A stretch of DNA of 64,000 nt, from NCBI GenBank assembly GCA_965240325.2, contig OZ251222.1, positions 1,426,001 through 1,490,000 of the forward strand, read 5' to 3'. Source of the DNA: Rebecca billardiae RCC1528. Its lineage: Eukaryota > Protista > Haptophyta. The translations under genes and the position numbers were made by a program. Position 1 is the first letter of the stretch; every line of letters starts with the position of its first letter. A model generated the notes under the pieces. It did not search any database. It was not told the origin of the DNA and was given only the letters and a program-made list of their open reading frames with translations. Of the stretch, positions 8,574-57,653 are shown piece after piece.

Positions 8574-8881
8574 CGTCCGCGCAGGTCTCTCTCGGCTCTA
8601 TACGGTTCACTGCGGCTTCACTGTGAAGCAGTGTCACAGGCTCACTCAAGCGGGCAGCGGCTACTAGCCTTCCGCGTCGGCGGTGGCCGCGGTGGGCAGG
8701 ACACATGTCATCGCGGTATATTAATTTAATAGTAGTAGTCGTTCACTTAATATTCACCAGGCAGCGGAATTAATATTCTAGCCGTCGTAGCTAGACTTTA
8801 TTCGACACTTTAAACTTATAATAATTCTAATACCAAATGTATTATAACTAGGCCCATGACCAGTAAGAGCGCGAAATAAGA

Positions 8882-10349: not shown

Positions 10350-12005
10350 CGGGCCGCCGGGTGGTCCACGAGAGGAGTGGATCGACGAGGGGTTGTGTCT
10401 CAGACGGGACGGGCACGCGCGCGCAGCAATGTGTGAGAATTCGGCCGTTTGCGCCGGTTTCAAGCTATTGCCGCAGCCAGCTTTAACGGTACCCTATTTA
10501 AATCCTTTAAAAACATTGACCCTGCTCGCCAGCTCTCCACGAGCTTGATGATGAACACACCTGTACTACTACCATAGTAGTAGATCATCATTCTCCAGCA
10601 GCTCTTCACGAGCTCATTACGACAAAGTTGAATGAAAGACAAACGTCGTCAGACTGATTCTATGATTTCAGCACGTGCATCACGAGTCACCGAAAAGATG
10701 AATACCCATTCAGGCCCTCATCACCTCCGGTCATCATCTCCCTATCAGCTCTCCACAAGCTCATTGCGACCAAGTTGAATCAAGTGCAATAGTACGATCA
10801 TTGGTTGCTATTGGCGACGTTAAAAATGCAGCTCGCTCGTCGAGCAGTTGTCGCCGTTTGCTCTCCCACCCTACGCCTTCCCCGCAAACTTAGGGCTTGA
10901 TTCCCACTCTTCACCCCCGTTTTTGCTGTCGACCTGTCGTCAGGGCGTTGAGGTGGGCGTTCTGCGCCAGTGTGAGTGCCACGTGGCCTGGTAGCACTGC
11001 CTACTCCAGTACTGTACTCTCTGACTTACGTCAGCCCGTGTCGGGTGACCTCAGCCGCAGTTGGCATCATCGCGCGCGGGCGCACACGCACGCCGCTGCT
11101 GGCCGGCGACGTGATGAGTGCGTCGGGCAGCGTGTGCGCACGAATCGAGTGTCAGCAGCAGCGCTCGCTCGCGCTCAGCGGGTATACATGCGTGCTTGCT
11201 AGTCATCTGGATCAGCAGGCTACCAGCCGTGGTGGACGTTGCAGCAGATGGGGTGAAAGGCTCGACCGCACAACGGGCAAAAGGAGGGCGAGAGCTGACG
11301 GTAACTGCCACCGTGCCTACGTTCGCGAGAGGGCTGAGCACCTTGACCTTACGCCTCGCCGTGCGCCGTGGCTGGCCGATGGATTGGATGCACATTCCCC
11401 ACCTCCAGCGTCGCGCGTGGGCTCTGAGCCGGGTAGTGTCTCAACGGCCTCGTCGTCTGCCGGTTTGTTGCGCAGGCGGCCAAGTTTGTTGTCGTCCTCA
11501 GATGGCCCATCGCTGGGCCCATCGTCTGCTTTGTCACCCATATGATATCGACCGTACCGACCCTTCAGCTCGCGACCCTGCGCGCACGGACGCCATCGCG
11601 AAGGGTCGGACCCCACCCTTCACGCTCCTGCCCGCGCCGTGGCCAGACATCGAATTTGATATTGAACATCAATGAACTCTACTCAGATCCGAGAACATTG
11701 GAGCTATCTCGCCTGCCTGATGAGCTGTGTGCGTCTCTCATTCTTAGTCAACTGTAGCTAGTACAGACTACTACTGTCGGAAAGGATGATAACCCGGCGA
11801 AACCACTGAGCTCACGGTCCTCGCGAACCGATTTAGCTCAGTCGTTTCGGGCTCTTCATAATCTCCTCCCGGACAACAAAAGACGCACACAGCCAGCACG
11901 GGCAAGATGGATGTATCCGCCGCTTCTACAGTCTACTACTCAGCTGAGCAGAACCTCTAGGCTACTACCGCCTACTACTAGCTCGGCCAGCGGGGAATGC
12001 TCTCT

Positions 12006-12050
<45 letters not shown>

Positions 12051-12361
12051 CGTCCGCGCAGGTCTCTCTCGGCTCTATACGGTTCACTGCGGCTTCACTG
12101 TGAAGCAGTGTCACACTCACTCAAGCGGGCAGCGGCTATACTAGCCTTCCGCGTCGGCGGTGGCCGCGGTGGGCAGGACACATGTCATCGCGGTATATTA
12201 ATTTAATAGTAGTAGTCGTTCACTTAATATTCACCAGGCAGCGGAATTAATATTCTAGCCGTCGTAGCTAGACTTCATTCGACACTTTAAACTTATAATA
12301 ATTCTAATACCAAATGTATTATTATAACTAGGCCCATGACCAGTAAGAGCGCGAAATAAGA

Positions 12362-13829
12362 CTACCACAGCCTCTGGAACTTGTTCTCGTGGCTGCCGCC
12401 CACTGCGTTGAAGCCGTACGAGCGCGAGTCCATTGGCGGCGTAGCGTAGCGCACGACCGGTGGGCGACCCTGCTCCGAAGCGGAGAGGCGATTCTCGCGC
12501 GCGCAGCGCGGCGCTTCGCCGCCCCAGCGCCGCCAGCACGCGCGGGCGATCTGCGCGCGTGCTCGGCGCAGCCCGTCCTTCTCCTTGGACACGTACGCAT
12601 CCGCGCCGGCCGCAGCGTACATCCGGCGGTCTGCGCTCGAGCCGTTGCACGAGACGACAAAGGCGACGAGGTTGTGCTCGGCCTCGGGCACCGCGGCGCG
12701 CACGCGCGAGATCACGCTCGAGCCCCGGGGCACACCCACGCCGAGATCCTGGTCGGAGAAGAGCACGACGGGCCCGGCGCGCACCAGTGCGGCGAGCGTC
12801 TCCGCGTATTCGATCAGCTGCGCTCGTTCGCTCTCCTCCGTCGCGTCGACGGGCGGGAAGACGATGGGCTGCTGGCGCGGGCTGCTGCCGGCCGCGTCGG
12901 CTGCGCCCTCGAGCAGCGCGCCCACGCGCGAGCGCATGATGGCGCGCGTCGTCCGCGAGTCGTCGACGATGAGGACGGTCGCCGACGCCGGGATGCTGAA
13001 CTCGTCGATCGCGCGCGCCTCGGACGCGCTCAGCATCCCGACCGGCACGTCCATCCGGAAGAGGAGGTGGCGCGGCGCGCCCTCCGCGTACACGGGCGGC
13101 ACGACTCGGCCGCCGAGCGCGGCTGCGCAGCGCTGGATGAGAACCCTGTGGCGCGCGGGCGGTCGGGCGCGCGCGGAGAGACACAGGTCAGCCTTTGCGC
13201 CGCCACCACCGTCCCCGCCTTCGCACTCCGCACGCCGGCGCGAGCGCGCACCGCGTGCCGCTCTCCAGCACCTCCGACAGGTCCTCCGCGTCGCACGACA
13301 GCGAGTCCGCCACCACGTCGATGGTGAGCGTGGAGTGCGCGAGGGTGAGGGCAAGCCGCGGGCACCATCCGATCCCAAGCATGTGTAGGTCACGGCAGGC
13401 CGCCGTCACCGCCACTCGGATGGGTGCGGGGTCGACCTCGACGGTGCCCTCGGTCCACGAGTGCGTGTCTTCTTCCATCATGTCGTCGTCGCTGCCGGCG
13501 ATGGTGAGGTCGACGTCGGCGTCGTCCCTATCGACGATCTCGCTCAAGTGCACGAGTTCGGGTGTCGGCGTGTACGCGCCAGCGACGAGCGCCTCGTGCA
13601 CCACCGTGCTCTGGAGGCGGTTCATCGCGTCGCGTATCTCGCGCGCCGCGTCCTCGAGCGCGGGTTGTTGTGGCGTGGGCGCAGCGCGGGCCAGCTCGTC
13701 GAGAATGGCCGTTGCGCGGATCAGCGGGTTACGGAAGCCGTCCTCGAGCGAGCACAGCGCGTGGCTGGTGAGCGACGCGCCGCTGCGCAAGCTCGTGCGG
13801 CTGCCGTCGTCGTTGTGGGAGGCCTGCAT
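12362..13829 (-). CDS. Hybrid histidine-kinase-like/response-regulator protein, copy 4; complement(join(12362..13145,13252..13829))
   Basis: Same motifs and intron. Similarity to the other copies decays just upstream of the MQASHN ATG, which supports that start. Confidence 0.8.
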
Positions 13830-14161
13830 CGGGCCGGGTGGTCCACGAGAGGAGTGGAGGAGTGGTGATGTGGGTCTGTGGGAGGCGGCAAATTGTGATG
13901 CTGAGAATCGGCCGTTTGCGCCGGTTGTGGGATTTTGCCGCTGCCGTGTTAAAACCTTTCACATTCTCAATTGGGCTCACATGGTTAGCTAGGTTGGTGT
14001 GCCGTTTGGCCAAACGGCACAGCATCGTTTCTCTATGACAGCGGCTCAATACTTTGTCGATCGGCGAGTCGGCGACCTGAAAGATACCCCCATAGGCATA
14101 TTGATCTTGAATGAAGCGATACCAACGTGTCGCTTCCGTCCCGAGCCGTAATGAAGATCGA

Positions 14162-16964: not shown

Positions 16965-19900
16965 ATGAGTCGAGCCGGCGAGCAGACATCTCCTCCAAGA
17001 GCGCGCGGGGCGTTCTTCGCCGATGATGGCCTTCTCGAACTCGGCCTGCCGAGGGCCTGGTCGATGGCTGACCACGCCGGCCGGGCGCTGCACGCCGAAT
17101 TCACAGATGCGTTCGCTCAGGCGCACGCGGCCGAGGAGGCCGCCGCCGAGGCGCTCTTCTCCGGCCAGGAGCCCTCCCCACTGCTTGACTCGCTCTTCGG
17201 CGCCCTGACGAGTGGCGAGAACGGCAGCGATGGGGCCGCTACCGCCCAGACCGACCCGAGCGGCTCCCCCGCGCGCTCGTCGCGACCGCCGACGCCGGCG
17301 TCTGTGCTTGGGCCCGCGCTCGCCGGTTCGCCTGGCGCACTCCGTCTTGAGCTGCGCGCGCGCGGAGATGAGCCGACGAGAGCGGGGCGCCACGCGTGGA
17401 CCACCGGCGCGGGCGCGGGCGGCGAGAGCCCGCGCATTCGGGCACGCTCGCCCACCGAGGCCGAGGACAGCGCGCGCGCGTGGGAGCGGCTGGGCGCGCG
17501 GCTGAGCGCCAATGGCTTTGGCCCGCCGCCCGCGCGCCGCGCGCCGGCGGGCGCGCGCGCGCATGGCGCCGCCTCGGCGCACGAAGGCGGTGCGCGCGGT
17601 GCGCCGACGAGCGCCGCGCTGCTCGGCGCGCTGGACGCCGTGCTCGACCAGTTCGAGCAGCGCGGCGCCATCGTGCACGACCTGCTCCGGGAGCTGGAGG
17701 GCGCGCGGCAGCGCGCGGCGCAGAGCGCGCACGGGCCGGCGCCGGGGGCGGCGCGCGGCGGCGGGCGCGGCGAGCACGGCGCGGAGGGCGCGGAGGGCGC
17801 GGAGGCCGAGGGCGGCGCAGACGGCGCGGCGCGTGGTCTGCGGGCGCTTCGCGCGCGCGCGGCCGCGCTCGAGCTCGCGCTGCGCGAGCGGGACGCGCTG
17901 ATCGCCGAGCTGCGGCCGAGCGACACACTTGGCGCGGCCTCGGCTTCGGCCGGCGCCGAGCCGGGCGGCGCGGCGCGGAGCGCGCGGCCGCGGCTCCTCG
18001 GCTCAACGGCCGCGTCGCTCGCCGAGACGCACACGGCGAGCCCGCGCTCGGCGCGCGCGCAGCACCCGCCCAGCCCCGAGCGCGACGGCGCGGAGGGCGC
18101 CGCTCGGAGCCCGCCGCCCTCCGCCACACCGCCGCCCAAGGGCGGGCGAAGCGCCGGCGGCGCGCGCCCGCCGCCTCCGCCGCACCGCCACCCTTCGGGC
18201 GAGCTCGCCGTCGCCGCCGCCGCCGCGGCGCGCGCCAGGCTCGAGCTGGAGCGCGAGCGCGCGGCGCGGGCGGAGGAGCAGGCCGAGTCCCGTCGCGCGG
18301 CGTCGCGCGCCGACGCGCGCGTCGCGCGCGCGAGCGAGCGCGCGCGCGCGCTCGAGGCTGAGGGCGCGGCGCTGCGCTTTGAGCTGCGGCTGCGGCCGTC
18401 GGCGGCGGCGTGGGCGGCGGCGGCCGCGGAGATGGGGGCGCTGGAGGAGCGCGCGGCGCGCGCGGAGGGTTCGCGGCAGCGCGCGGAGGCGAGCGCGACG
18501 GTGGCGCGCGCGCGGCTCGACGCCGTCTTCCCCGAGCGGCTTCCCGTCGGGCCGGGCGCCGCCGCGCGTCCGCGCCGCGCGCGCTCGGCGGAGCGCGCGC
18601 GCGGCGGCGCGTGCGCGCCGCCGCTCGCCGACGCCGAGCCGGGCGGCGCGGACGCGGAGGACGAGCTGCGCGCGTACCTGCGCCGCGCGATGCGCGACGC
18701 GGCCGAGGGCGCGGTCTCGGGCATCGCGCGCGCCGAGCCCACCGCCGTCGACGAGTGGCGGCTGCCGCTGGCCGAGCGCGCGCCGGCGCGCTCGCGCGCA
18801 GCGGTGGCGGCGGCGGGCGGCGGCGCGGGCGGCGGCTGGGCCGAGCACGGCGGCGGCGGCGCGGCGCCCGGCTCGCCCGCGGAGGCGCGCGGCCTGGTCG
18901 CCGCCGCGGCGGAGCTGGAGCAGCTGCGCGCGGCGCTCGCCCGCGAGCAGACGGCACACCGGGCCGCGCGCGCCCAGCTCGACGCCGCGCGCCGCCAACT
19001 CGAGCTCGCGACGCGTCGGCTGCAGCACAGCAGTGCGGCCGCGGCGCGCGAGCGCGCGGCGGGCGCGCGCGCGCGGCCGGAGGGCGGCGGCGCGAGCGCG
19101 CTCGCGCTGCGCGAGGCCGACCTCAGCGCGGCGCACGCCGAGCTCTCCGCGTGCGTGCGCGACGCGTGCGCGGCCCTCGGCGTGCGCGGCAGCCGCGCGC
19201 TCGCGCCCGCCGCCGCCAAGCTAGCCAAGGTGCGGCGCGCGCGCGCGGTGCGGTGCGGTGCGGTGCGGTGCGGTGCGGTGCGGTGCGGTGCGGTGCGCGC
19301 CGCCGATTGCTGAGCGCCCGGCGCCGCGCGACCGCCCGCGCGGCCGGAGGGCTCTCAAGACTCGTGCCTCGCGCGCGCGCCCGCGCCCGGGCGGCGCGCG
19401 CGCGCAGCTCGTCGGCGCGATGCCCGCCCTCGACGCCTTCGTGCGCCGCGCGTGCGCCCTGCTCGCGCCGAGCGCGGCGCGCGGCGCGCCCGCCACGCCG
19501 GAGGGCGCGCTGCGCGAGCTCGAGCGATGGCGCGCGGAGCGCACGCGCGTGCAGCTGGCGCTCTCGGTGGGGGGCGCGGCCGAGGCGTCGGGGGCGCGGG
19601 CGTGCGGCGCGGAGAGCGAGCGCGCCCGCGTGCTGCGCGCTGAGCTCGAGCACACCACCGCGCGGCTGCGCGAGGCCGAGCAGCGCCTGCGCTCGGCAGA
19701 CGTTGCGAGCGCCGCGGCCGCGGACGACGGCTCGGCCGCTGCTGCCGCCGACCGGCTGCTGCGGGAGCTGGCGGGCCTGTTCGGCGTGCGCTCGCGCGAG
19801 GGGCTGTACCCGACGGTGCGCGCGGGGCGCGCCGGCCGGCGCAGGCCCTCGGCACGCTGCGCCCGACGCTTGGCGCGACCGCCCACGCCGACCGCCCCAC

Positions 19901-20410
19901 CCGCCCGCCCCGTCGCGTCACGCGGCCCCCCGCCGCGCGCCGGCGCCGCGCGCTCGCCCGCGGCCACGGCCGCGCAGCTCAACCGCGTGCACGCGTTCGC
20001 GCAGGAGCAGAGCGCCTTCCTGCGGCGCGCGCGCGAGCTGCTCGGTCTGCACGAGCGCGCGGGCGTGGCCGAGATCCTGCGCGCGCTGGGCGACCCGGCC
20101 GAGCCCAGCGCGCACGCGCACACGCCTCCAGAGCGCGTGCGCGCCGCGGCCGCTCGCACCACCGGCGGCCGGGCTGGCCCCGTGGCAGCGGCGGCGGCGG
20201 CAGCGGCCTCGTCGCCGCCCGACGCGCCGCGAGCGGTCGGGAGCACTGCGGCGCACGACGGCGGCACCGCTGGTGGCGCCGCCGGCTTTGAGCTCGAAGC
20301 GCTCCCGTCCGAGACGACGGCTTCCATCGAGCTCGCTGAGCGCGAGGACGGCGCCACGACCATCGTGGCCGCACCGCCTCTCGGCGACGACGCTGGCCGG
20401 GGGTACCGGT

Positions 20411-27590: not shown

Positions 27591-30232
27591 TCAGCGCTTC
27601 GGCTTGACGCTCGTGAGGCTGAGCTCGTCGAGCAGCCACGCGTAGTCGAAGGCCAGCTCGCGCAAGTACTTGTAACGGTCGCTCGCGGAGAAGTGGCCGG
27701 CGGAGAGGTCCATCTTGAGCAGCACTTTGCGCGGGTCGGTCGGCGCGTTGGTCCGCTTGGCGCGCAGGTGTTGCACCCACTTCGCGGGCTCCCAGTATGC
27801 GACGCGCGGGTCGTGCAGCCCGCCGGTCGCGAGGATGCTCGGGTACTCCCGCGCGCGCACCTGGTCGATGGGCGAGTAGGAGAGCATGTACTCGTAGTAC
27901 CTGTGCGCGCGTGGCGCCGGGCGTGCGGCGGCGGCGGCGCCCGGTCGGCGAGCGGGCGCGCGCGGGTCGGCGGCGCCAGGCGGGCGGCGCGCGGCGCGCC
28001 GCACTTTGGCTCGTTCGGGTTGCCCCACTCCTCCCACTCGCCGGTCGTGAGCGGGATGCTCGGGTCGCACATCGTGACGATGAGGTCGACGAAGGGGACG
28101 CCGGCGATCACCGCGCGGAAGAGGTGCGGCGCAAGGTTCACCGCGTTCCCCACGAGCAGCCCGCCCGCCGAGCGCCCCTCGCAGCTCATCGCCTCGGGCC
28201 GCGTCCAGCCCGCCGTCACGAGCGCGTCGCCCACGTCCACAAAGTCGTTGAACGTGTTGCGCTTCGTCAGGTACTTGCCGCCCTCCTCGTACCACTGCCA
28301 TCTGCCGTTCTCCGAGCCGCCGCGCACGTGCGCGATCGCGAAGACCATCCCGCGGTCGACGAGCGGCAGCGTGCGGCTCGAGAAGGCGGGCTCGATCGAG
28401 TGGCCATACGAGCCGTACCCGTACAGGTGCAGCGGCGCGGGCGCGGACGGCGCGCCGGACTCGGCGTGCTCGACGCGCACGAGGTCCTTGCGCCAGAAGA
28501 GGGTGACGGGCACCTTGGTGCCGTCGCGCACGACGATGTGCCGCCGCGCGCTCGTGTACAGCGACGGGTCGTAGTTCGGCACGGGCGTCTCCTTCACCAC
28601 GCTCATGCGGCGCGAGTCCATGTGGTAGGCGACGGCGCGGCGCGGCGTGACGGGCGACGAGAAGCCGAGCCTGAGCACGCGCGTGTCCATCTCCTCGTTC
28701 GGGCCGAGGCCGCACTCGTACGCGGCCTCGGGCCACTCCACGCGGTGCCAGCCGCGCACGCGCGGGCCCTTGCCCGCCATCTCGAGCACCCACACCTGCG
28801 TCAGCCCCGCCTCGCGCCCCTTCACGACCACGTACTCGCCAAAGCACGTCGCGTACGAGATCGTGCGCTCCGCGCAGTGCGGCAGCACCGGCTCGCCCTT
28901 GGCGGTGGCGAGCGGCTGCCAGTGCGCGCGGCCCGGCGTGGCGAGCGGCGCGACGACGACCTTCTCGTTGTGCGCCTCGCCCTCGTTCGTCGTGATGTAC
29001 AGCCAGTCGTGCCGGTGGCTCACCGAGTAGCGCAGCTTGTGCTCGCGCGGCTGCACGACGGCGAGCGGCGGCGGCGCCGCGCTCAGCGGGCCGTCGAGCG
29101 GCTTGCCGCGCCGGTCGGTCAGCTCGAGCAGGTGCACCTCCGAGGTCTCGGTCGAGTCGGCGCTGACGAGGAGGAGCCGGCCGTCGCGCGTCTTGCCCAC
29201 CGACACGTAGAACAGCCCGTCCGGCTCGTCGAACAGCTTCACGTCCTGCGCCTGCGGCGTGCCGAGCACGTGCCGCCACACGGCGCACGGCCGGTGCGCG
29301 GCGTCAAAGGTCGAGTAGTACACGGAGCGCTCGTCCGCGCCCCACACGACCTCGCCCGTCGTGTTCTCGAGGGCGTCGTCGAGCGGGCGGCCGGTGGCGA
29401 GCTCGGCGAAGCGGATCGTGTACGTCTCGTACCCCTTGCCGTCGACCGACCAGCCGAGCAGCGTGTGGCTCGGCGAGACCTCGACCGCGCCCACGTCGCA
29501 GTGGTCGGGGTGGCGCGTCGCCACCTCGTTCTCGTCGAGCAGCACCTGCTCGCGCGACTTGCCCGACGCGCCGCGCGGCTTGCGGCAGTGGATGACGTAG
29601 CTCAGCCCCTCGACGGTGCGCGTGTAGTACTCGTACGGCCCGTGCGGGTACGGCGCCGAGTCGTCCGTCTCCTTCACGTGCGAGAGCAGCTCGGCGTACA
29701 GCGCCTCGCGGAACGCCTCGAGGTGCGCGGTCGCGGCCGCCGAGTAGGCATTCTCGGCGCGCAGGTGCGCGAGGACCTCGGCCGACTCGCGCTTGTCGTC
29801 GCGCAGCCAGAAGAGCTCGTCCACCATCTCGATCGGCGGGTCGAACGCGCTCGCGCCGCGCTCCTCGCCCGCGACCGCGCCAATCTTGACGACGTGCGGC
29901 CGGCGCGGCGCGACCGGCGGTTGCACCGAGCCGTCGGCGAGCGCGATCGTCGAGAAGCTCGTCGCCGCGAGCAGGCTGAACGTCGCCGCGGTGCGCGCCC
30001 GCGCGCCGCTCGAGCCGGACGCGCCGTCCCCGCCGCCGCCGCCGTTGGTGCGACGGCCGCCGCCACCCCCACTGCCGCCGCTGCCGCCGTGGCCGCACAC
30101 CCCGCGCGACGCGAGCGCGGAGAAGGGGAACGCGAGCCGCCCGAGACGGACGCCCCTGCCGGCGAGCCCAGCCGGCGCGGCGTGCGTGACCGGCGGGCCG
30201 ACGCGCGCGCACGAGCGGAGCGCGCGCCACAT
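27591..30232 (-). CDS. ptrB: Oligopeptidase B (peptidase S9A), probably organelle-targeted; complement(join(27591..27900,28005..30232))
   Basis: WLRDD, YGYGSYG, AHVRGG, KRNTFNDF, catalytic GRSAGG, HDPRV, AGHF and EWEEWGNP. A 104-nt GT-AG intron restores the C-terminus. Confidence 0.95.
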
Positions 30233-30619
30233 CTCCAAATTGTGCGGCCGCGGCTTCGGGGTTCGGCTCCGCACGGGCAGGCCCCCCTGCCCGTGTGCGC
30301 GCTTGAGAATCCGCCGCCCGGAAACCTCTCTCTCGGTCTCGATCTCCCTTTCTGTGTCTTTTTACCACAATCAAGATCGAATTAGTTCGGTCCTCGACGA
30401 GCCCTGCTGCTTGCCGCGACCGGCTTGGGCTCACTGGACGGCCTGGACGCTGGTCAGGCGACCTGGCGCGGCCCGTCGTCGCCGCCCCGGCTGGTCCGGC
30501 ACCCAGCACACCTACAGACAGATGATGATGCGATAACGACCGACGGCGGCTCGTGACAGCTAATGAATGATGGTCCGCGGCCGGACTGCTGCCAGGCCCA
30601 GGCCCATACGGGCCGCATA

Positions 30620-32960: not shown

Positions 32961-34188
32961 GCGCTGCCGCCAGGGCGCACTCGACTCACATCAAGAAGTC
33001 CGCCTGCTCGCCGGTCGGGCGAGTTACGGTACTGTACTCAAGACGCGCTCAAGCCATTCGATCGCGGTGCAGGCGGAGCTCTGCCACCAACGCCGACTTG
33101 TCGACGATCGAGCACTGCCGACGACAAATCAGGAGACCTGCGCCCGTGCGCCGTCTCATACTACTATGACGACTGGAATATCGGTACTGACTAATCATCA
33201 CGCCTTAACCCAGTGTGCACGTTATAACTATCATAGTAAACTGTACTGATGTATCGGGGGGAATATGCGCACCCCGGCCGGAGGGCCGGACCGCCCGGAC
33301 TGTACCCGCCGGCCAAACGGCGCCGCCCGGATTCCGATACCCTGCAGCAGCCTCTCTGGCCTGGCGCCCCCGCTCCTGACCAGCCCAGACCCCCGACACC
33401 TGCGGTGCCTGAGTGAGGCCCCGCCCCTGCGCAAGTCTGCCAGGCTGTGCCAGCGCCGCGCGCGCGGAGCAGGCGCCACTGCAGCTCCTTACCAGCGAGA
33501 CGACGCTTCGCGCGCACCCGGCGTGCAGGCACAGCCCGCCCTGGAGCAGCCCGCCGAGGCGGACCTTGGGCAGCAACCATACATGCAGGCCGGCACACGC
33601 GGTGGGGTGGCACCAGTGCCGGCCCCAGCCCGCAAGCGCAAGCAGCCGGACGCCCCGGCCCTCGCCGCTGGTGAGCCAGCGAACCCTCCGGGCAACAGAA
33701 CCCTGCCGCCGGCCTTGAGAGGCCGACACGCCATACCGGGGCACATATCACCTGAGGGCCAGGCCTTCTGTGTGATAAGCTACCCCAGTCATGCTGCTTG
33801 ATACACGCCTTCCCCAACCGACAGTGGGGCTCCACGTTCCTTACTACATCCTCATCCTGTCGGCGCGCTGTTGCATCGGCGCCCAGTCGGCGAGTTCGGA
33901 CGACGACGTTTTGTGGACGACGGTGGGGCGAGGACGACGGGCGCTGGCGCGCCGCGAGGCGGCCGCAGCCCTCATCCAGGCCTCGCAGGCGGACGGCTGA
34001 ACGAATTTTTCCGGCGGCGCTACCATCGGCGACGGCTTCATGGGCGGTGACAGTTGGCGGGCGTCAATCTCGCCTGCCTGAGCTGTGTGCGTCTCTTATT
34101 CTTACAGTAGTGAACTGTAGAGCGGAGTGCATGCTCCTCCGATCATGCCGATTCCCGGGAACGAACGGAAGATCACGCCCACAAGCCG

Positions 34189-36597
34189 ATGACCGACGCG
34201 ACGGGGATGCAGGGCGGGCAGGCAGGCTCGTGCGTCGTCCTCGCGCTGGGCACTCGTGGCGACGTGCAGCCCATGGCCGTCGTCGCGCGCATGCTCGCCG
34301 AGGGCGGCGTGTCGGACGTCCGCTTCGCCACGCACGCGACGTTTGCAGACGCGCTCGCGGACGTGGTCGGCGCGAGCGTGCAGCTCGTGCAGCTCACGGC
34401 GTTGCCAGCGCCGATCTGGGGCGTCGAGCGGTCGGATGGGGGGATGGACGCCGCCGGTCGCGCCTGCCTCCGCGCCGAGTGCGCGCGCGCGTGCGGCGGC
34501 GCGCGCACGATCGTGTTCAACCTGTTCGCCCTCGAGGGGTACGTGCTCGCTGAGGCGCTGGGCGCGCGCGCGCTGGCGTGCTCGCCGTACGTGATCCCGT
34601 ACGCGGCGCCGTCGGGCTTCGAGGCGCGGCTCGAGGCGCGCCACCCCGAGCTGCACCGCGCGCTCGCGCGCCAGCCCGACGGCGGCCTCGTGAGCCGCGC
34701 GGACGTGCTGCACTGGCTGTGGCCTCTCTTTGACGAGCGGCGCTGGGCGAGCTGGCGGGCGGAGCTGAGGCTCGGCCGCGTGCCCTGCCTGGACAGCGAG
34801 GGGCGGGTGAGCCTGGCGCACGCCACGTCGCTGTGCTACCTCTTCTCCGACCTCGTGCTGCCGCGCAGCGGCGGCTGGCCGCGCTGCGCGCACGTGATTG
34901 GCTACGCCGTGCGGGCGCCCGCCGCGCGGGACGTGCACGCGGACGGCGCGCACGCGAACGGCGCGCCGTGCGCCGGCGCGGACGTGTACGCCACGTTCGG
35001 CTCGGCGGCGCTGATCGGCGTGCTCGAGGAGGAAGACGCGCGGCTCGCGGCGCGCGCGCTGGCGAGCGCGTGCGCCTCGCTCGGCGTGCGCGCGCTGCTG
35101 CACGCGCCGCACCGCGGGCCGGTGTCGCGCGCGCTGCGCGACGCGCTCCGCGGCGGCGCGCCCGGCGCCGAGCGCGTGCGCGTGCACGAGGGCGAGCTCG
35201 ACGTGGCGGCGGTGCTCGCGCGCTCGCGGCTGGCGCTGCACCACGGCGGCGCGGGCAGCACGGCGGACGCGCTGCTCGCCGCCGTGCCCTCCGTCGTGCT
35301 CCCGCTCCACTTCGACCAGTACAACTGGGCGGCGCGCGTGTGCGCGCTCGGCGCCGGCGCCGAGCTGCGGCTGCGCGAGCTGCGCGCGCGCCCGCGCGCG
35401 CTCGAGGCCGCGATGGCTGCGCTGCTCGACGGCGGCGGCGGCGCGGCGGGCGCGCGCGCGGCGGCCGAGCGGCGCGGCGCGCTCGCGCGCTCGCTGCGCG
35501 CCGAGGCGTCCGGCAGCACCACGCGCCGCCTGCTCGCGCTGCACGCGGGCGCGCACAGCCCGCGCGCGCCCGACGCGGCGCGCGACGGCGGCGCGGCGTC
35601 GCAGCTGCTGCGCCGCGCGTACGTGGCGCGCGCGGCGCGCGGCACGGCCGCGGCGGCGGACGGCGGCGCGGCGCACGACGCCGCGCGGCACGCCGGCGGC
35701 ACCCTCCGCCTGCCCTGCGGCGCGCGCGTGCGCGTGCCGTGCCGCGCCGAGGGCGCGCACCTGCTGGCTGAGATCTGGGAGCGGCGCGCGTACGCGCGGC
35801 ACGGCGTCGCGGTGTGGCGCGGCGGCGAGGGCGGCGGCGAGGGCGGCGGCGAGGGCGGCGGCGCGGCGGCGCTGGTGGTGGACGTGGGTGCGCACGTGGG
35901 GCTCTTCGCGCTGTGGGCGCGCGCCGAGTGCCGCGGCGCGCGCGTGCTCGCGCTCGAGCCCGCGCCCGAGACGTGCGCCACGCTGCGCGACAACGTGGCG
36001 CGCAACGCGCCGCGCGACGTGAGCGTGGTGGAGGCGGCGGCGGGCGCGAGCGAGGGCTGGCGGCAGCTCACGTACTACCCGCACGCGCCGTGCACGTCGA
36101 CGTGCGCGCCGCGCGAGCGCGAGGCGGCGCACCGCGGCGCGCTCGCGCCCTGGCGGCTCGAGGGCGCGCGCGTGCTGCGCGTGCGCCAGACCACCGTCTC
36201 GGCCGCGCTGCGCGCGCACGCGGCCGAGCCGGGCGGGAGCGACGGCGGCGGCGCGTGCGCGCGCGTGCGGCTGCTCAAGGTGGACGCGGAGGGCGCCGAG
36301 CTCGAGGTGCTGCGTGGCGTGCGCGCGGAGGACTGGGCGCGCATCGAGCAGGTCGCCGTCGAGGTGCACGCGGTGGACGGCCGCGTCGAGGCCGTCGCCG
36401 AGCTGCTGCGCACGGCGGGCGCCTTCGAGCGCGTGCGCGTGGACGCGGACGCGCACATGCTCGCGCTCGGCCTCGACAACCGCATGGTCTTCGCCACGCG
36501 AGAGCCGTCACGGCCAGTGACGGGCCCGGGGAGCCGCGACGCGCGCGGCTCGCCGCGGCCGGTGCCGCCAGGGGCTTCCGCGTGCGGCGCGCACTGA
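34189..36597 (+). CDS. Fusion of a sterol 3-beta-glycosyltransferase-like GT-B domain (GT1/GT28-type) and an FkbM-family SAM methyltransferase, 802 aa
   Basis: N-terminal part: LGTRGDVQP, VRFATH, YATFGS, HHGGAGST, PLHFDQYNW. C-terminal part: VVDVGAHVGLF, VLALEP, LTYYP, LLKVDAEGAELEVLRG, IEQVAVEVH. One uninterrupted ORF. Confidence 0.9.
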   Translation: MTDATGMQGGQAGSCVVLALGTRGDVQPMAVVARMLAEGGVSDVRFATHATFADALADVVGASVQLVQLTALPAPIWGVERSDGGMDAAGRACLRAECARACGGARTIVFNLFALEGYVLAEALGARALACSPYVIPYAAPSGFEARLEARHPELHRALARQPDGGLVSRADVLHWLWPLFDERRWASWRAELRLGRVPCLDSEGRVSLAHATSLCYLFSDLVLPRSGGWPRCAHVIGYAVRAPAARDVHADGAHANGAPCAGADVYATFGSAALIGVLEEEDARLAARALASACASLGVRALLHAPHRGPVSRALRDALRGGAPGAERVRVHEGELDVAAVLARSRLALHHGGAGSTADALLAAVPSVVLPLHFDQYNWAARVCALGAGAELRLRELRARPRALEAAMAALLDGGGGAAGARAAAERRGALARSLRAEASGSTTRRLLALHAGAHSPRAPDAARDGGAASQLLRRAYVARAARGTAAAADGGAAHDAARHAGGTLRLPCGARVRVPCRAEGAHLLAEIWERRAYARHGVAVWRGGEGGGEGGGEGGGAAALVVDVGAHVGLFALWARAECRGARVLALEPAPETCATLRDNVARNAPRDVSVVEAAAGASEGWRQLTYYPHAPCTSTCAPREREAAHRGALAPWRLEGARVLRVRQTTVSAALRAHAAEPGGSDGGGACARVRLLKVDAEGAELEVLRGVRAEDWARIEQVAVEVHAVDGRVEAVAELLRTAGAFERVRVDADAHMLALGLDNRMVFATREPSRPVTGPGSRDARGSPRPVPPGASACGAH

Positions 36598-36973
36598 GGC
36601 CACAGGCTTCTATATACCGGCGGCACCTGCTGCCGCGACTAATGGCCCGCGGTGCAGGGCGGAGCGCGTAGCGTGGAGCCCTCGCCCCGAGGGCTCCACA
36701 CTACGTGCCGGAGTGACGCCCGTCCGTCCAAAAAAACTCGAACGCCCTTTAGGATGCTTAAACGTGACGAACCGTTGGCTCTGGCTCCGGTTGACCCCTG
36801 CCAGTCCGGTCATAGAAACCGGGCGTACCGAAAATGATCTTCGCATTCCTGCGGCCGAATGAACGCCCGAAGTGTCCCACAGGGCTCCAAGTAGGCTGTA
36901 GGGTTACTATGGATGGCCAATAACTAATAATAAGTGCCCACTGCCCAGGGTGTGAAACTCAGTTTGTGACTAC

Positions 36974-37111
36974 TTCAGACTCTATTTCCATAGCTATTTA
37001 CCCAGTCCGGTGACATATTTCCAATAGCTACGGGTGCATCCGGATCGCACCCGGACCGTGTTCTGACCAGAGTCTGAAATGGGTAAATACATAGTAAAAA
37101 TAGAGTCTGAA
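36974..37111. repeat. Short inverted-repeat (MITE-like) hairpin
   Basis: TTCAGACTCTATTT...TATTTACCCA versus TGGGTAAATA...AAATAGAGTCTGAA. Confidence 0.5.
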
Positions 37112-38078
37112 CTATAGAGGAAGTGCTTGTTGGCCCGATATCGCTCTGAAGTCATCATCTAGGCATCCATTGTGATTGAGGTCCTCCTGTGCAGTTTTCA
37201 CGAGTGACTTCATGAAGGAGCTCACAGTGCCCGTCTCTGGCAGGGGTCAACCGAAGCCAGAGCCCGTTACCGAAGCGCGTTTTTTTCGGCGATCAATAAT
37301 GACATTGCGCCGCTTGCAAGGTCATTCACGCCTACACGCCGCCCCCGGTGCACCTATGATACGTTTGGTCTTCACCGACTATTTATTGCATGTAGTCGCT
37401 CTTGGTTAATATGGCCTCTCGCGAGCGCGGCACCGGCCCGCAGAGCCAGAGGCCGCGACTCCAAAAGCTTGGTTGGGCCACGGGGCCGTCGCGCGCCGGT
37501 AGTGGCCGAACTCGCGAACGCGTTGGCCACTTGCGCACCGTTTCAATCCGACGGACTCGGCGCGCGGCTGCGGCGGGTCCCGACGGCCGTCGGCCCTCGT
37601 TTTCCGCTCCCGCAAGCCTTGCCGACAGTTTGCTTGAGACCCCTTCGCCTCGTTGAGAAAGCCGCACAAACCCAGCGAACAGTGGCCGAGATGCTAACAA
37701 GATTGCGACTGGGCCGCGAATCGACATCATCGTGCCTTTCGGGATGACGATTGGCTCTTTTAGCTTCGATTCCAAAGATTCGTAAAGATGCTATTGAGTT
37801 CATAATGTTCATATGTCTCACTTTGTCCCGGCGGGAGAAGTTGAGATGATCCGTCGACCGACCAATGGGAAGGCAGAACCGCGGGCATCGCGAAAAAACG
37901 CGTGATGAATTGTTCGCGGGTTGCGGCCCGACAGCCCGCCCGCCCAGGCCCGACAAAACACGCAGTGGGCCGGACGGCCGAACATTAAAATTAAATTGTT
38001 TTTTAAACTCGGCGTCACTGTTATACGGTGACGCGATATAAAGAGTGTGAACTGTACCGGTGGCGCGGTACTAAGCTA

Positions 38079-38140: not shown

Positions 38141-38358
38141 CATCAGTACTCTCTCTCTCTCCATACTTATTATTATTTAAAATATAGTGCCAGTAGGCAA
38201 TCGCGTTCGATCCCGGATCCGCCATCGGCCATGGGCATGGCACTTGGCAGCGCGGACCGTGTCACGGCTGCCCGAGCGGCGCGCCCCAAGGCTCCCAAGC
38301 CGGGCTGCTGCCGGGCAGCCGGCCGACCCGACGCTGCGCTGCCAGCTTTGCAACGTGC

Positions 38359-39785
38359 TCACGCCGAGCGCGGGGCGAGCAAGGCGAAGCACACGACGGC
38401 GATAGCCCCGACGGTGATTCCTGCGCCCAGGCGCGCGGCTGTACCTGCCATACGAACAGCGGCCAGGGGCAGGGCGCGTCGGGAGCGCAGGTCAAGTCAG
38501 CATCGCGATCGAGAGAGCATGCGCGGCCCCTCGCGATGCGGACGCGCGCCTTACCCCAGTCTAGCCCGCAGCGGCTCACCACGGGCCCAGTGCCCGCCGC
38601 CGTGATGAAGCACGTCGGCTCCTTGCCCGTGCGCTGGCGGTACTCGATCTGGAGCGCAGCGATGAGCTCTGGCGCGCGCTCTGCGCGCACCAGCGCCACC
38701 GTGCAGCCGCCGAATCCGCCACCGGTCATGCGCGCTCCGTACACGCCGTCGACGCTCATGGCGATCTCCACGAGCGCATCGAGCTCCGGCGTGGAGACCC
38801 CAAAGTCGTCGCGCAGCGACTTGTGGCTCTCGAGCATCAGCTGGCCAGCGGACGCGTAGTCGCGGCGGCGGAACGCCTCGACGGCGTTGAGAGTGCGCAC
38901 GTCCTCTGTGATGGCGTGGCGCGCGCGCTTCAGCTCGACCGGGCTGATGTCGTTCTTGCAGGCCTGCAGCTCAGCCATCGTGCAGCCCCGCAGCAGCGGG
39001 TCTGCCGCGGCTGCCGAGCTCGACTCGCTGCTTGGGAAGCGCTTGCGAATGGCGAGCGCGGCCGAATGGCACTCGCGCACGCGGTCTGGATACTCTGAGC
39101 CGGTGAGCTCGTGCTTCATGTTGGAGTTGGTGACGACGAAGGCGACCGACGGGTCGTTCATCGGCACGCGCGTCGTCTCGTACGGCGGCAGGCAGTCGAT
39201 GAGGAGCGCGTGCCCCGCGACGCCGCACGACGAGATCATCTGGTCCATGATGCCGCACGGCACGCCAGCAAAGTCGTGCTCGCACTTCTGGCAGCGGAGG
39301 GCGCGCAACTTCGGGTCGATGCGCAGGCCGTACGCCGTCTCGATGAAGACGGCCGTGGCAACCTCCAGGGAGGCGGAGCTGCTCAGCCCACCGCCCAGCG
39401 GCACGTCGCTCGCGAACGCGAGATCGAAAGAGCCGGTGTGCCCCGGCAGATCGCGCAGGTACTGCGCCACGACACCTTTGACATAGTTGGCCCATGCGGG
39501 CTCCCCACGGGTGAGGCCGGACTTCGTCGCGCGAAACGTCACGACCTGCCGCCCGCCAGCATTCACCGACACGATGCGGCACGTGCTGCCGGATGGGTTG
39601 CGCACGCCGGCCACAGCAGTGCGCTTGTCGATGGCGATCGGCATCACAAAGCCGCCGTTGTAGTCCGTGTGCTCCCCGATCACGTTGACGCGTCCAGGGG
39701 CCGAGACGCAGAATGCCGCTCGCGCGCCAAACGTCTCGGTGAAGAGGGCTGTCGCCTGCTCGCTCGGGGACGCGTCGCGCGCCAT
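38359..39785 (-). CDS. GALK: Galactokinase; complement(join(38359..38444,38555..39785)), 438 aa, hydrophobic C-terminal tail
   Basis: APGRVNVIGEHTDYN, WANYVKG, VPLGGGLSSSAS, CGIMDQ, GARMTGGGFGG. Intron GTAAGG...GCTGAC...GGCAG at 38445-38554. Confidence 0.93.
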
Positions 39786-40148
39786 GCTGCTCAACGTCCG
39801 CACGGTGGTAGGCCCTGGCCCCGGCGACGGCGAGGCGGCCACCGCTCCCGAGCACGGAGTCGGAAAAGCTTGGACGAGGCTCCGCGTGGCCGCCCGGGCC
39901 GGGGGGGGGGGGATGATGGACGATGACCCGATGACAATCAAGACGAACAGGACTGACTAACTCGATCAAGTTGAAAGTTCAGAACTGTATTGACTAGTGA
40001 GTCAGTGTCGCTCACAGTTGACGGTGTGTCGCGTGACTGTGTGACGCATCCATGCACTGAGACTCCGCCTGAACAGCCACAGCCACAGCCACAGCGACCG
40101 ACCGATAACTTGTCGGGAGTGCTGGCATCACAGTGGGAGACGGCGTGC

Positions 40149-57262: not shown

Positions 57263-57653
57263 GTTGATGGCAGCTCAGGCGTCGAAACTGTTACACATGC
57301 CAGACAGCAGACTGCAAGACAGCAGCCGACGGAGGGTGCACCGCGGGTCCCTAACTGCGTTGGTTCTACGGAAGGACCGCGGAACGCGGTCATATATGAT
57401 GTAGTCGCGTCGTCCCGACGATATGACTGTCACGTCAAAGTTCCGAGACTATATTTTGACGGTGCGCACTTATTTAATAGTTATGATTATTCGAATTTTC
57501 GCCCGTCCGTATCCGACGATTCGCGCCGGCCCTTCGGAGGCTTCATGCTTGCACTCTACTGACACTGTACATCAGTTGCACATGACGATGCATCTGAATA
57601 ATCCTATCATATCATCATCGTCATCAATGTCGCCACCATCCTCAGATCAGTCA

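What the first reader, a model, noticed from the sequence alone, without database searches (positions are those of the whole stretch)
34189..36597. Single-ORF fusion of a sterol-type glycosyltransferase and an FkbM methyltransferase
Seen: a complete GT-B domain (GTRGDVQP...HHGGAGST...DQ) joined by an Ala/Gly linker to a complete FkbM-type domain (DVGAHVG, EP, KVDAEGAE), with no stop or evident intron between them. Known: the first family glycosylates sterols and other lipophilic acceptors with NDP-sugars, and FkbM-family enzymes are SAM-dependent O-methyltransferases. I do not know a characterised protein with this pairing. Inference: a bifunctional enzyme making an O-methylated steryl or lipid glycoside.
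Basis: partly seen in the sequence, partly recalled or inferred. Interest (0 to 1): 0.75.

Follow-up and report, generated by a model that had tools for sequence, protein, structure and literature searches.

The report
Algal glycosyltransferase–methyltransferase fusion enzyme gene
This alga has one intact gene that joins a sugar-adding enzyme to a methyl-adding enzyme; the same uncharacterised fusion occurs in many other microalgae, and it probably makes a methyl-capped sugar on a small or lipid molecule that nobody has yet identified.

Summary
Window 34189-36597 (+) is one uninterrupted 802-codon ORF. It has an N-terminal GT1 (GT-B) glycosyltransferase and a C-terminal FkbM-family SAM methyltransferase, and both keep their signature motifs. 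Third-position GC stays at 90-100% along the whole ORF, linker included, so the linker is coding, not an intron.

The pairing is not unique. At least about 30 clusters at 50% identity carry it, always in the order GT then MT. Named members come from haptophytes (Diacronema, Prymnesium), eustigmatophytes (Nannochloropsis), a pelagophyte, green algae (Botryococcus, Chlorokybus) and a choanoflagellate transcriptome. I found no paper that characterises it.

"Sterol-type" is only weakly supported. The same genome encodes a canonical sterol glucosyltransferase elsewhere (191 bits to yeast UGT51, against 39 bits for this domain). The fusion's GT domains form their own clade.

The closest relatives of the MT domain are bacterial FkbM enzymes. 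Some lie beside GT1 and deoxysugar genes; others sit inside NRPS adenylation domains, in the layout of the serine O-methylating type.

Best reading (inferred): a soluble bifunctional enzyme that glycosylates a lipophilic or small-molecule acceptor and then O-methylates an aliphatic hydroxyl, probably on the sugar. The acceptor and the sugar are unknown. No RNA run was listed for this genome. A word search of the scan's earlier notes on this genome found no note of this fusion.

The parts
34189..36597 (+). Complete coding sequence (802 codons plus TGA) of the GT1-FkbM fusion protein; a single exon here
   Evidence: ORF listing. GC3 is 0.97 overall and 0.90-1.00 in every 50-codon block. Homologues start and end at equivalent positions.
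34222..35553 (+). GT1 (GT-B fold) glycosyltransferase domain, residues ~12-455
   Evidence: Pfam PF06722, PF04101 and PF03033. Foldseek matches GT1 small-molecule glycosyltransferases (OleD, GtfA/B/D, kitacinnamycin GT, UGT51) at E 1e-16 to 1e-18 and target TM about 0.7.
34249..34272 (+). N-terminal GTRGDVQP motif (residues 21-28), shared with UGT51 and the vancomycin-type GTs
   Evidence: Aligns to GSRGDVQP of UGT51. D25 is present in 26 of 30 family members; the other four are N-terminally incomplete or misaligned rows.
34516..34539 (+). Family-specific FNLFALEG motif (residues 110-117) in the acceptor-side N-subdomain
   Evidence: F113 is invariant; N111, L112 and A114 are at least 90% conserved in the 30-member alignment.
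35239..35319 (+). Nucleotide-sugar donor motif HHGGAGST ... DQ (residues 351-377)
   Evidence: H352, G354, G356, P372, D376 and Q377 are invariant in 30 of 30 members. The stretch aligns to the UDP-glucose-binding region of UGT51.
35554..35694 (+). Low-complexity Ala/Arg/Gly-rich linker (residues ~456-502), coding
   Evidence: pLDDT below 50 for 456-467 and 480-502. GC3 is 0.98-1.00. GC-rich imperfect short-period repeats.
35695..36513 (+). FkbM-family class I SAM methyltransferase domain (residues ~503-775), including an N-terminal beta-hairpin/helix extension (503-531)
   Evidence: TIGR01444 at 87.4 bits and PF05050. The domain model has pLDDT 90.4. Structural match to FkbM 2py6: Z 15.2, rmsd 2.2 A over 172 residues.
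35819..35871 (+). In-frame 12-nt tandem repeat (4.5 copies) encoding the GGEG repeats, in a loop just before motif I
   Evidence: Tandem Repeats Finder. Low pLDDT at 546-554.
35875..35961 (+). SAM-binding motif I VVDVGAHVG (563-571) and the acidic EP (590-591)
   Evidence: G567, G571 and E590 are invariant; D565 and P591 are at least 90% conserved. The motif fits the DVGx(N/H)xG form described for type II O-methylating domains (PMC8341866).
36271..36300 (+). FkbM signature LLKVDAEGAE (residues 695-704)
   Evidence: In the MT-domain alignment K697, D699 and E704 are invariant and E701 is at least 90% conserved; in the 30-member full-length set K697 is 29/30 and D699, E701 and E704 are 28/30. 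E725 is invariant and H227 of the domain numbering (H727 of the protein) is at least 90% conserved.

Best explanation
The ORF is a real, intact, single-copy nuclear gene of a haptophyte-type alga. It encodes a soluble protein with no signal peptide and no membrane span, made of two catalytic domains.

Shown here: an N-terminal inverting-type GT1 (GT-B) glycosyltransferase and a C-terminal FkbM-family SAM-dependent methyltransferase, joined by a disordered linker. The gene belongs to a conserved fusion family that is spread over several algal lineages.

Inferred: the GT domain transfers a sugar from an NDP-sugar to a hydroxyl of a lipophilic or small-molecule acceptor reachable from the cytosol. 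The tethered MT domain then O-methylates an aliphatic hydroxyl, most likely on the sugar just installed, giving an O-methyl-glycoside cap. The fusion keeps the two steps coupled. The acceptor and the sugar are not known, and the acceptor need not be a sterol.
For: Gene and domains:
- One intact ORF with uniform coding periodicity through the linker.
- Both domains pass curated family thresholds.
- The donor-binding and SAM-binding residues are intact and are invariant or nearly so across the 30-member alignment.
- Confident two-domain model. The GT domain is structurally closest to GT1 enzymes that glycosylate lipophilic small molecules. The MT domain is a class I methyltransferase closest in rmsd to FkbM 2py6.
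- The highest hydropathy window is the beta1/motif I strand of the methyltransferase, not a membrane span. The GT fold starts at residue ~14, which leaves no room for a signal peptide.

The fusion is real and old:
- 56 fetched proteins carry both domains, always in the order GT then MT.
- Members are named from Diacronema lutheri, Prymnesium parvum, Nannochloropsis gaditana, Microchloropsis salina, Pelagophyceae sp. CCMP2097, Botryococcus braunii and Chlorokybus atmophyticus. There is also a complete ORF on one Acanthoeca spectabilis transcriptome contig.
- An ESM Atlas cluster of 64 eukaryotic proteins carries both Pfam families.
- The same subclades recur in the GT tree and the MT tree.
- The Prymnesium orthologue has many exons, and one exon spans the linker.
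- The gene is a single intronless ORF on eukaryotic contigs L002 and L004.

Coupling of the two steps:
- In bacteria the nearest stand-alone MT relatives (37-41% identity) lie within 4 kb of a GT1 gene in 6 of 80 loci.
- These sit in sugar-pathway contexts: GT1 + NTP-transferase + FkbM + further MTs in L075; GT1 + TylF macrocin-type sugar O-MT + FkbM + GT1 in L116; NDP-sugar 4,6-dehydratase + EryCIII-type GT + FkbM in L066.
- Other close MT relatives are inserted in NRPS adenylation domains. That is the layout of the type II domains, whose representative KtzH O-methylates the aliphatic hydroxyl of serine, and they share the DVGx(N/H)xG motif (PMC8341866).
- A characterised precedent for a GT fused to the MT that methylates the sugar it adds is chlorovirus PBCV-1 A064R (PMC9614988).
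Against: - No enzymatic or metabolite evidence exists for any family member.
- No RNA run was listed for this genome, so a single transcript is inferred here, not seen.
- Two reviews of microalgal glycoconjugates mention no O-methylated steryl or lipid glycoside of the expected kind, so no known product is waiting for this enzyme.
- The bacterial GT1 neighbours belong to other GT1 clades (28% identity). The 6-of-80 adjacency has no measured background rate.
- The conserved PGNST motif of the MT subfamily reads PCTST here.
- The domain-docking test gave no answer.
- FkbM itself methylates the aglycone of FK506, not a sugar (my knowledge of the family), so the target of methylation is open.
Confidence: 0.55

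Rival explanations
1. One reading: the enzyme is a sterol glycosyltransferase whose product, a steryl glycoside, is O-methylated by the FkbM domain.
For: The best sequence match among solved structures is yeast sterol 3-beta-glucosyltransferase UGT51. The match includes the GxRGDVQP and HHGGxGT...DQ motifs. UGT51 is also among the top structural matches. Steryl glycosides occur in haptophytes such as Pavlova/Diacronema and Isochrysis (PMC6315552).
Against: The UGT51 match is 39 bits and motif-local. A second gene in the same genome (C5:2205079-2206326, minus strand) matches UGT51 over residues 80-508 at 191 bits and passes PF03033 at 67 bits, so the canonical role is already filled. PF03033 is below its cutoff in the fusion (20.1 against 26.2). 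The fusion's GT domains form a separate clade (100% SH-aLRT) from the GT1s that sources label as sterol glucosyltransferase. The review of algal steryl glycosides mentions no O-methylated sugar.
Confidence: 0.12
2. The two domains act on the same acceptor but not in sequence on the sugar. The methyltransferase methylates a hydroxyl (or another nucleophile) of the aglycone, as FkbM does on FK506, and the GT glycosylates a different position. Alternatively, the two activities serve unrelated substrates and are fused only for co-expression.
For: The founding member FkbM methylates the macrolide, not a sugar (established knowledge; it is the family definition of TIGR01444). The closest MT relatives inside NRPS act on amino-acid side chains. 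No interface between the domains could be supported.
Against: The fusion order is strictly conserved, and both domains have co-diverged across distant algal lineages, which argues for a shared pathway. The bacterial contexts pair this MT subfamily with sugar-nucleotide and sugar O-methylation genes.
Confidence: 0.2
3. The enzyme decorates a macromolecular glycan (cell-surface or scale polysaccharide, or a glycoprotein) with a methylated terminal sugar, as proposed for FkbM genes of prasinophytes and their viruses.
For: FkbM methyltransferases of Ostreococcus and prasinoviruses are predicted to methylate glycans (PMC5082852 and PMC5371798). Chlorovirus A064R does this on capsid N-glycans.
Against: There is no signal peptide or membrane anchor, so the protein should be cytosolic rather than in the Golgi lumen. 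Every close structural relative of the GT domain acts on small lipophilic acceptors. No fused copy was found in IMG/VR viral contigs.
Confidence: 0.08
4. The single ORF is misleading. Either two separately transcribed genes happen to be in frame, or this is a decaying, unexpressed copy.
For: No RNA-seq run could be listed for this genome. The linker is low-complexity, and an out-of-frame upstream ATG (34131) opens an overlapping ORF.
Against: There is no stop in 802 codons. GC3 stays at 0.90-1.00 throughout. All conserved catalytic residues are retained. The same fusion occurs in more than 30 divergent clusters, including a transcriptome-derived complete ORF and a multi-exon gene model. The gene is single-copy in the 72-Mb genome.
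Confidence: 0.04

Closest known systems
Chlorovirus PBCV-1 A064R (two rhamnosyltransferase domains plus a methyltransferase domain)
   Same: One polypeptide joins the glycosyltransferase to the SAM methyltransferase that O-methylates the sugar it has just added. This was shown biochemically (PMC9614988). It is the best functional analogy.
   Different: A064R uses a GT-A-fold domain and a novel GT domain, not GT1/GT-B. Its MT was described only as a class I SAM methyltransferase. It acts on capsid N-glycans and is viral. No sequence relationship to A064R was tested here.
Sterol 3-beta-glucosyltransferases (yeast UGT51/ATG26, plant UGT80; CAZy GT1)
   Same: GT-B fold, the N-terminal GxRGDVQP motif and the HHGGxGT...DQ donor motif. 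UGT51 is the best sequence hit among solved structures.
   Different: Only 39 bits to UGT51, and the N-domain model is below threshold. The domain lies in a separate clade. The genome has its own full-length UGT51-like gene elsewhere. There is no PH/GRAM region.
Bacterial natural-product GT1 enzymes with neighbouring sugar O-methyltransferases (macrolide/glycopeptide type: OleD, GtfA-D, EryCIII; TylF-type and FkbM-type MTs)
   Same: The same two enzyme families work in one pathway. In loci L066, L075 and L116 a GT1 gene and an FkbM gene of this subfamily are neighbours, together with NDP-sugar biosynthesis genes. The structures of these GTs are the closest to the model.
   Different: In bacteria they are separate genes, and the adjacent GT1s belong to other GT1 clades (28% identity). 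Here they form one eukaryotic polypeptide.
Type II O-methylating domains of interrupted NRPS adenylation domains (KtzH type)
   Same: An FkbM-type (Pfam PF05050) domain with the DVGx(N/H)xG SAM motif. On the MT tree NRPS-embedded FkbM domains fall in the half that adjoins the fusion family. In the paper KtzH methylates an aliphatic hydroxyl.
   Different: Those domains are inserted between motifs a8 and a9 of an adenylation domain and act on a carrier-bound amino acid. Here the domain follows a glycosyltransferase. That the hits are type II is inferred from their layout and motif, not tested.
FkbM (31-O-methyltransferase of FK506/FK520 biosynthesis), NoeI and RfbT
   Same: Family membership (TIGR01444, PF05050). 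There is a weak, sub-threshold hit to the RfbT model. NoeI and RfbT methylate sugars (my knowledge, not tested here).
   Different: Those are stand-alone bacterial enzymes, and their substrates differ. There is no close sequence identity to any characterised member (no PDB sequence hit).

Membership tests
CAZy GT1 / GT-B nucleotide-sugar glycosyltransferases (Pfam EryCIII-like_C, UDPGT clan) | Curated family model matched above its threshold | tested here: met
   PF06722 at 41.2 bits (cutoff 31.7) and PF04101 at 22.5 bits (cutoff 22).
CAZy GT1 / GT-B nucleotide-sugar glycosyltransferases (Pfam EryCIII-like_C, UDPGT clan) | Two-Rossmann-domain GT-B fold | tested here: met
   The AF2 model has pLDDT mostly above 90 in residues 15-440. 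Foldseek E values are 1e-16 to 1e-18 with target TM about 0.7 to OleD, GtfA/B/D and UGT51.
CAZy GT1 / GT-B nucleotide-sugar glycosyltransferases (Pfam EryCIII-like_C, UDPGT clan) | C-terminal donor-binding motif H-H-G-G-x-G-(T/S) ... D-Q | tested here: met
   Residues 351-358 and 376-377. H352, G354, G356, D376 and Q377 are invariant in 30 of 30 family members.
CAZy GT1 / GT-B nucleotide-sugar glycosyltransferases (Pfam EryCIII-like_C, UDPGT clan) | Glycosyl transfer from an NDP-sugar | not testable with these tools
   Needs an enzyme assay.
Sterol 3-beta-glucosyltransferase (UGT51/UGT80, EC 2.4.1.173) | Full-length similarity to the characterised catalytic domain, including the N-terminal (acceptor) half | tested here: not met
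   39 bits to UGT51, confined to two short motif stretches. PF03033 scores 20.1 bits, below the 26.2 cutoff. The genome's other GT1 gene scores 191 bits over residues 80-508 and 67 bits to PF03033.
Sterol 3-beta-glucosyltransferase (UGT51/UGT80, EC 2.4.1.173) | Phylogenetic placement with sterol glucosyltransferases | tested here: inconclusive
   The fusion-family GT domains form a clade (100% SH-aLRT) apart from bacterial GT1s, some of which sources label as sterol glucosyltransferase. Characterised eukaryotic sterol GTs were not in the tree.
Sterol 3-beta-glucosyltransferase (UGT51/UGT80, EC 2.4.1.173) | Sterol as acceptor | not testable with these tools
   Needs an assay with sterols and UDP-sugars.
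FkbM-family SAM-dependent methyltransferases (TIGR01444, Pfam PF05050) | Curated family models matched above threshold | tested here: met
   TIGR01444 at 87.4 bits (cutoff 37.7), covering the whole 143-position model. PF05050 at 45 bits (cutoff 22.7).
FkbM-family SAM-dependent methyltransferases (TIGR01444, Pfam PF05050) | The two conserved regions: motif I (DVGAxxG, followed by EP) and K-x-D-x-E-G-x-E | tested here: met
   VVDVGAHVG at 563-571, EP at 590-591 and LLKVDAEGAE at 695-704. These positions are invariant or at least 90% conserved in alignments A1 and A2.
FkbM-family SAM-dependent methyltransferases (TIGR01444, Pfam PF05050) | Class I (Rossmann-like) methyltransferase fold resembling a solved FkbM protein | tested here: met
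   The domain model has pLDDT 90.4. 2py6 (FkbM, Methylobacillus) aligns at Z 15.2, rmsd 2.2 A, 172 residues. That is the lowest rmsd among the top matches, although other class I MTs have equal Z.
FkbM-family SAM-dependent methyltransferases (TIGR01444, Pfam PF05050) | SAM-dependent O-methylation | not testable with these tools
   Needs an assay. O-methylation is inferred from KtzH-type relatives.
Algal GT1-FkbM fusion family (unnamed; e.g. Diacronema KAG8459800.1, Prymnesium KAL1521240.1, Nannochloropsis EWM21838.1) | Both domains on one polypeptide in the order GT then MT, with the family motifs FNLFALEG and E..EI....Y ahead of motif I | tested here: met
   The query groups with Diacronema and P0106 in both domain trees: 51% identity to Diacronema KAG8459800.1 over the GT columns and 53% to P0106 over the MT columns.
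PBCV-1 A064R-type GT-MT enzymes | Homology of the domains to A064R (a GT-A rhamnosyltransferase and its methyltransferase) | not tested
   The A064R sequence was not fetched. Its published GT domains have other folds, so only the logic of the fusion is shared, not family membership.

The most novel reading that the evidence does not exclude
The GT1-FkbM fusion family makes a class of O-methyl-glycosylated lipids or small metabolites that has not yet been described. Such compounds would be shared by ecologically dominant marine and freshwater microalgae (haptophytes, pelagophytes, eustigmatophytes, green algae). They could act as membrane or surface components, or as signalling or defence compounds, and might serve as chemotaxonomic biomarkers.
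Probability: 0.3. Interest if true: 0.65.

Novelty: new variant of a known kind. Interest (0 to 1): 0.42.

Why it matters
If the two domains act in sequence, this gene family marks a pathway to methyl-capped glycosides in many abundant phytoplankton groups. The reviews I read describe no matching product. Orthologues exist in organisms that can be grown and, for Nannochloropsis, genetically manipulated. The product could therefore be found by knockout metabolomics or by in-vitro assays. The family would also add a second, eukaryotic example, built from different folds, to the one characterised GT-MT fusion I found in the papers read (chlorovirus A064R). It is not a unique oddity of this genome: it is a conserved family that has been annotated but never studied.

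Tried and rejected
- RNA evidence: the look-up of sequencing runs listed no RNA run for 33900-36900. Read laying was therefore not used, and single-transcript status in this genome remains inferred.
- Domain docking: complex prediction on residues 1-455 against 500-780 gave 'no answer' (score 0.00). This is neither support nor evidence against.
- First whole-protein word search: it returned only 4 hits because low-complexity words swamped the candidate list. The domain-wise search and the exhaustive HMMER search were needed.
- The genome search 'own' failed twice before it worked.
- Viral origin: a scan of IMG/VR found only single-domain relatives at 20-39% identity and no fused copy.
- Conserved synteny: the neighbours here are a galactokinase-like gene, a DUF7075 gene and an FtsJ gene. 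None recurs next to the orthologues in L002, L004, L008 or L009, so I rejected a sugar-gene cluster reading.
- Foreign composition: GC3 of 0.97 is at the top of the local range but still within it; ORFs in this window that match a Pfam family have 0.79-0.95. This is no evidence of recent transfer.
- Sequence search of the MT domain against PDB sequences found nothing. Fold searches show only a generic class I MT plus FkbM 2py6, with no clue to the substrate.
- Literature searches for the fusion found no paper describing it. Two reviews of algal glycoconjugates list no fitting O-methyl steryl or lipid glycoside.
Full report
**Observation**

Window 34189-36597 (+) holds a single ATG-to-TGA ORF of 802 codons.
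- Pfam finds GT1-type C-terminal models: EryCIII-like_C at residues 339-424 (41.2 bits, cutoff 31.7) and Glyco_tran_28_C. It also finds a sub-threshold Glyco_transf_28 N-domain at 16-65, and Methyltransf_21 (FkbM) at 565-733.
- NCBIfam TIGR01444 (fkbM_fam) matches residues 563-727 over its entire model at 87.4 bits, against a cutoff of 37.7.
- Codon-position GC is 0.83/0.61/0.97. GC3 stays at 0.90-1.00 in every 50-codon block, and is 0.98-1.00 across the Ala/Arg/Gly-rich linker. An intron or an intergenic spacer would not keep that periodicity, so the junction is coding.
- GC rises sharply at the start codon and falls after the stop.
- The GT fold begins at about residue 14 and the MT fold ends at about residue 775. 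Homologues start and stop at equivalent positions, so the gene model is complete as a single exon.

**Organism and copy number**

Earlier notes of this scan call the genome a haptophyte-type alga. My own data agree. The closest named relatives are Diacronema lutheri (51% identity over the GT columns of the domain tree) and, more distantly, Prymnesium parvum. The assembly is 72 Mb in 41 contigs, and the fusion gene is single-copy.

**The pairing is a family, not a singleton**

- An exhaustive HMMER search of 1.84 billion representatives gave 37 proteins at E <= 1e-30.
- Among all proteins fetched, 56 carry both domains, and every one has the order GT then MT. After near-duplicates are removed, this is about 30 clusters at 50% identity.
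- Named members:
  - Diacronema lutheri KAG8459800.1
  - Prymnesium parvum KAL1521240.1
  - Nannochloropsis gaditana EWM21838.1
  - Microchloropsis salina TFJ84837.1
  - Pelagophyceae sp. CCMP2097 KAJ1454332.1
  - Botryococcus braunii Bobra.0337s0002.1
  - Chlorokybus atmophyticus Chrsp1S08789
  - a complete 752-codon ORF on one contig of the Acanthoeca spectabilis transcriptome. I cannot exclude contamination for this one.
- Several clusters come from marine metagenomes and sit on contigs with eukaryotic neighbours, where the gene is an intronless single ORF.
- The ESM Atlas holds a cluster of 64 eukaryotic proteins, commonest in Chlorophyta, of which 98% carry PF05050 and 94% carry PF06722.
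- In Prymnesium the gene has about ten exons, and one exon runs across the linker into the MT domain.
- These independent gene structures make a gene-model artefact very unlikely.
- I found no fused copy in IMG/VR viral contigs, and no paper that describes the fusion.

**Domain phylogenies**

In a tree of 94 GT domains, the fusion-family sequences form a clade with 100% SH-aLRT support. That clade also holds some GT-only rows, at least one of which is a truncated prediction of a fusion protein. It is separate from 35 stand-alone bacterial GT1s of the YjiC/'sterol glucosyltransferase'-annotated type.

In a tree of 98 MT domains, 29 of the 30 fusion domains lie on one side. Bacterial stand-alone FkbM proteins and NRPS-embedded domains lie on the other. 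The split itself is weakly supported, at 61.

The same subgroups recur in both trees, for example:
- query + Diacronema + P0106
- the pelagophyte protein + P0006/P0007/P0009
- P0111 + P0123

This fits one old fusion followed by co-divergence.

**Is it 'sterol-type'?**

Only loosely.
- The best PDB sequence hit is yeast UGT51, but at 39 bits and confined to the GxRGDVQP and HHGGxGT...DQ stretches.
- Structurally the domain is as close to macrolide, glycopeptide and enediyne GTs as it is to UGT51.
- The same genome has another GT1 gene, on contig 5. It matches UGT51 over residues 80-508 at 191 bits (E 3e-55) and passes PF03033 at 67 bits. That gene is the natural candidate for the canonical sterol glucosyltransferase.
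- The fusion's acceptor-side half has its own conserved motifs (FNLFALEG; W..W.PLF), which suggests a different acceptor.

**The methyltransferase**

- The domain model is confident (pLDDT 90.4). It is a class I SAM methyltransferase. The solved FkbM protein 2py6 gives the lowest rmsd (2.2 A over 172 residues, Z 15.2), though many class I enzymes reach a similar Z.
- Residues that are invariant or at least 90% conserved across the family are intact here: D565, G567, G571, E590, P591, N602, K697, D699, E701, E704, E725 and H727. One subfamily motif differs: PGNST reads PCTST.
- The nearest relatives outside the fusion family are of two kinds.
  - FkbM domains inserted between AMP-binding and AMP-binding_C in NRPS proteins. 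This is the layout of the 'type II' O-methylating interrupted adenylation domains. Their representative KtzH O-methylates L-serine, and their SAM motif DVGx(N/H)xG is the one seen here (PMC8341866).
  - Stand-alone bacterial FkbM proteins at 37-41% identity.
- Of 80 bacterial loci holding such a relative, 6 have a GT1 gene within 4 kb. Three were examined:
  - L075 (Litorilinea MAG): two MTs, GT1, NTP-transferase and FkbM in one direction.
  - L116 (Thermoanaerobaculia MAG): GT1, TylF-type sugar O-MT, FkbM, GT1.
  - L066 (Streptomyces): NDP-sugar 4,6-dehydratase, EryCIII-type GT and FkbM.
- I have no measured background rate. From general knowledge of how few GT1 genes bacteria carry, 6 of 80 looks enriched. 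The pattern ties this MT subfamily to glycosylation pathways, but the adjacent GTs belong to other GT1 clades (28% identity).

**Mechanism**

Shown:
- an intact two-domain protein whose donor-binding and SAM-binding motifs are conserved;
- no signal peptide and no membrane span. The only strongly hydrophobic window is the beta1/motif I strand of the MT.

Inferred:
- a cytosolic or peripheral enzyme transfers a sugar from an NDP-sugar to a hydroxyl of a lipophilic or small-molecule acceptor;
- its tethered MT then O-methylates an aliphatic hydroxyl, most probably on that sugar.

The logic has a biochemical precedent in chlorovirus PBCV-1 A064R, where the MT domain methylates O-2 of the rhamnose added by the neighbouring GT domain (PMC9614988). 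That protein uses different folds.

I put 0.55 on this reading. The rivals are:
- methylation of the aglycone, or uncoupled activities (0.2);
- the steryl-glycoside version (0.12);
- decoration of macromolecular glycans (0.08);
- an artefact or an unexpressed gene (0.04).

Against all product-level claims: no family member has been assayed, and two reviews of microalgal glycoconjugates list no fitting O-methylated steryl or lipid glycoside.

**What could not be done**

- No RNA run was listed for this genome.
- The domain-docking test returned no answer.
- No PAE was available for the full-length model.
- Neighbouring genes (galactokinase-like, FtsJ, DUF7075) are not conserved next to orthologues, so I read nothing into them.

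**Verdict**

The pairing, however, is a conserved family across many algal lineages. It is already in the databases as hypothetical proteins, and its link to sterols is weak.

It is a new variant of a known kind: GT plus sugar-MT coupling is known from bacterial gene clusters and from one viral fusion. It is moderately interesting because the product is unknown and the family sits in ecologically important algae that can be studied experimentally.

It found only other FkbM-containing fusions in the same genome.

Noticed in passing
G000 contig 5, 2205079-2206326 (minus strand); locus L007:1-2985:-: A second GT1 gene in the same genome is the likely canonical sterol 3-beta-glucosyltransferase. 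It scores 191 bits to yeast UGT51 over residues 80-508 and 67 bits to PF03033. Its open frame is at least 995 codons and runs off the fetched locus.
   Followed up: partly
window 38262-39941 (-): A galactokinase-like GHMP sugar kinase (GalKase_gal_bdg, GHMP_kinases_N and GHMP_kinases_C) lies tail-to-tail 1.7 kb downstream of the fusion gene. This neighbour is not conserved next to orthologues in other species.
   Followed up: partly
window 36777-37264: A ~490-bp element bounded by 28-nt terminal inverted repeats (96% complementary) begins 180 bp after the stop codon. It looks like a MITE or foldback insertion. A 21-nt hairpin lies at 36664-36708 in the presumed 3' UTR.
   Followed up: no
window 34131-34553 (+), frame +2 relative to the gene: Out-of-frame upstream ATGs at 34131 and 34146 open a long ORF that overlaps the start of the fusion gene (part of ORF 33798-34553). 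If the transcript starts upstream of them, they would act as an overlapping uORF. The transcription start is unknown.
   Followed up: no
G000 contig 30, 588105-588791 (minus strand); locus L143:2192-3814:-: A paralogous FkbM-type gene (44% identity to the MT domain, 540-codon ORF) with no GT domain.
   Followed up: partly
window 16965-19313 (+), 27797-30385 (+), 57423-60167 (+): Three long GC-rich ORFs (782, 862 and 914 codons; the window reaches 84.5% GC at 18001-20000) have no Pfam match. ORFs 27797 and 57423 have GC3 of only 0.69-0.73 with GC1 of 0.87-0.95, so the listed frame may not be the coding one.
   Followed up: no
loci L075 (Litorilinea MAG), L116 (Thermoanaerobaculia MAG), L066 (Streptomyces sp. 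NPDC005890): Bacterial gene clusters that combine GT1 glycosyltransferases with FkbM-type, TylF-type and other methyltransferases and with NDP-sugar genes. L116 also has a weak (sub-threshold) match to a PapA-type acyltransferase. They look like pathways for O-methylated (deoxy)sugar glycosides, reminiscent of mycobacterial glycolipid loci.
   Followed up: partly
window 5270-13992: The ORF list shows a roughly 3.5-kb unit repeated three times, with similar ORF sets starting near 5270, 8880 and 12360.
   Followed up: no
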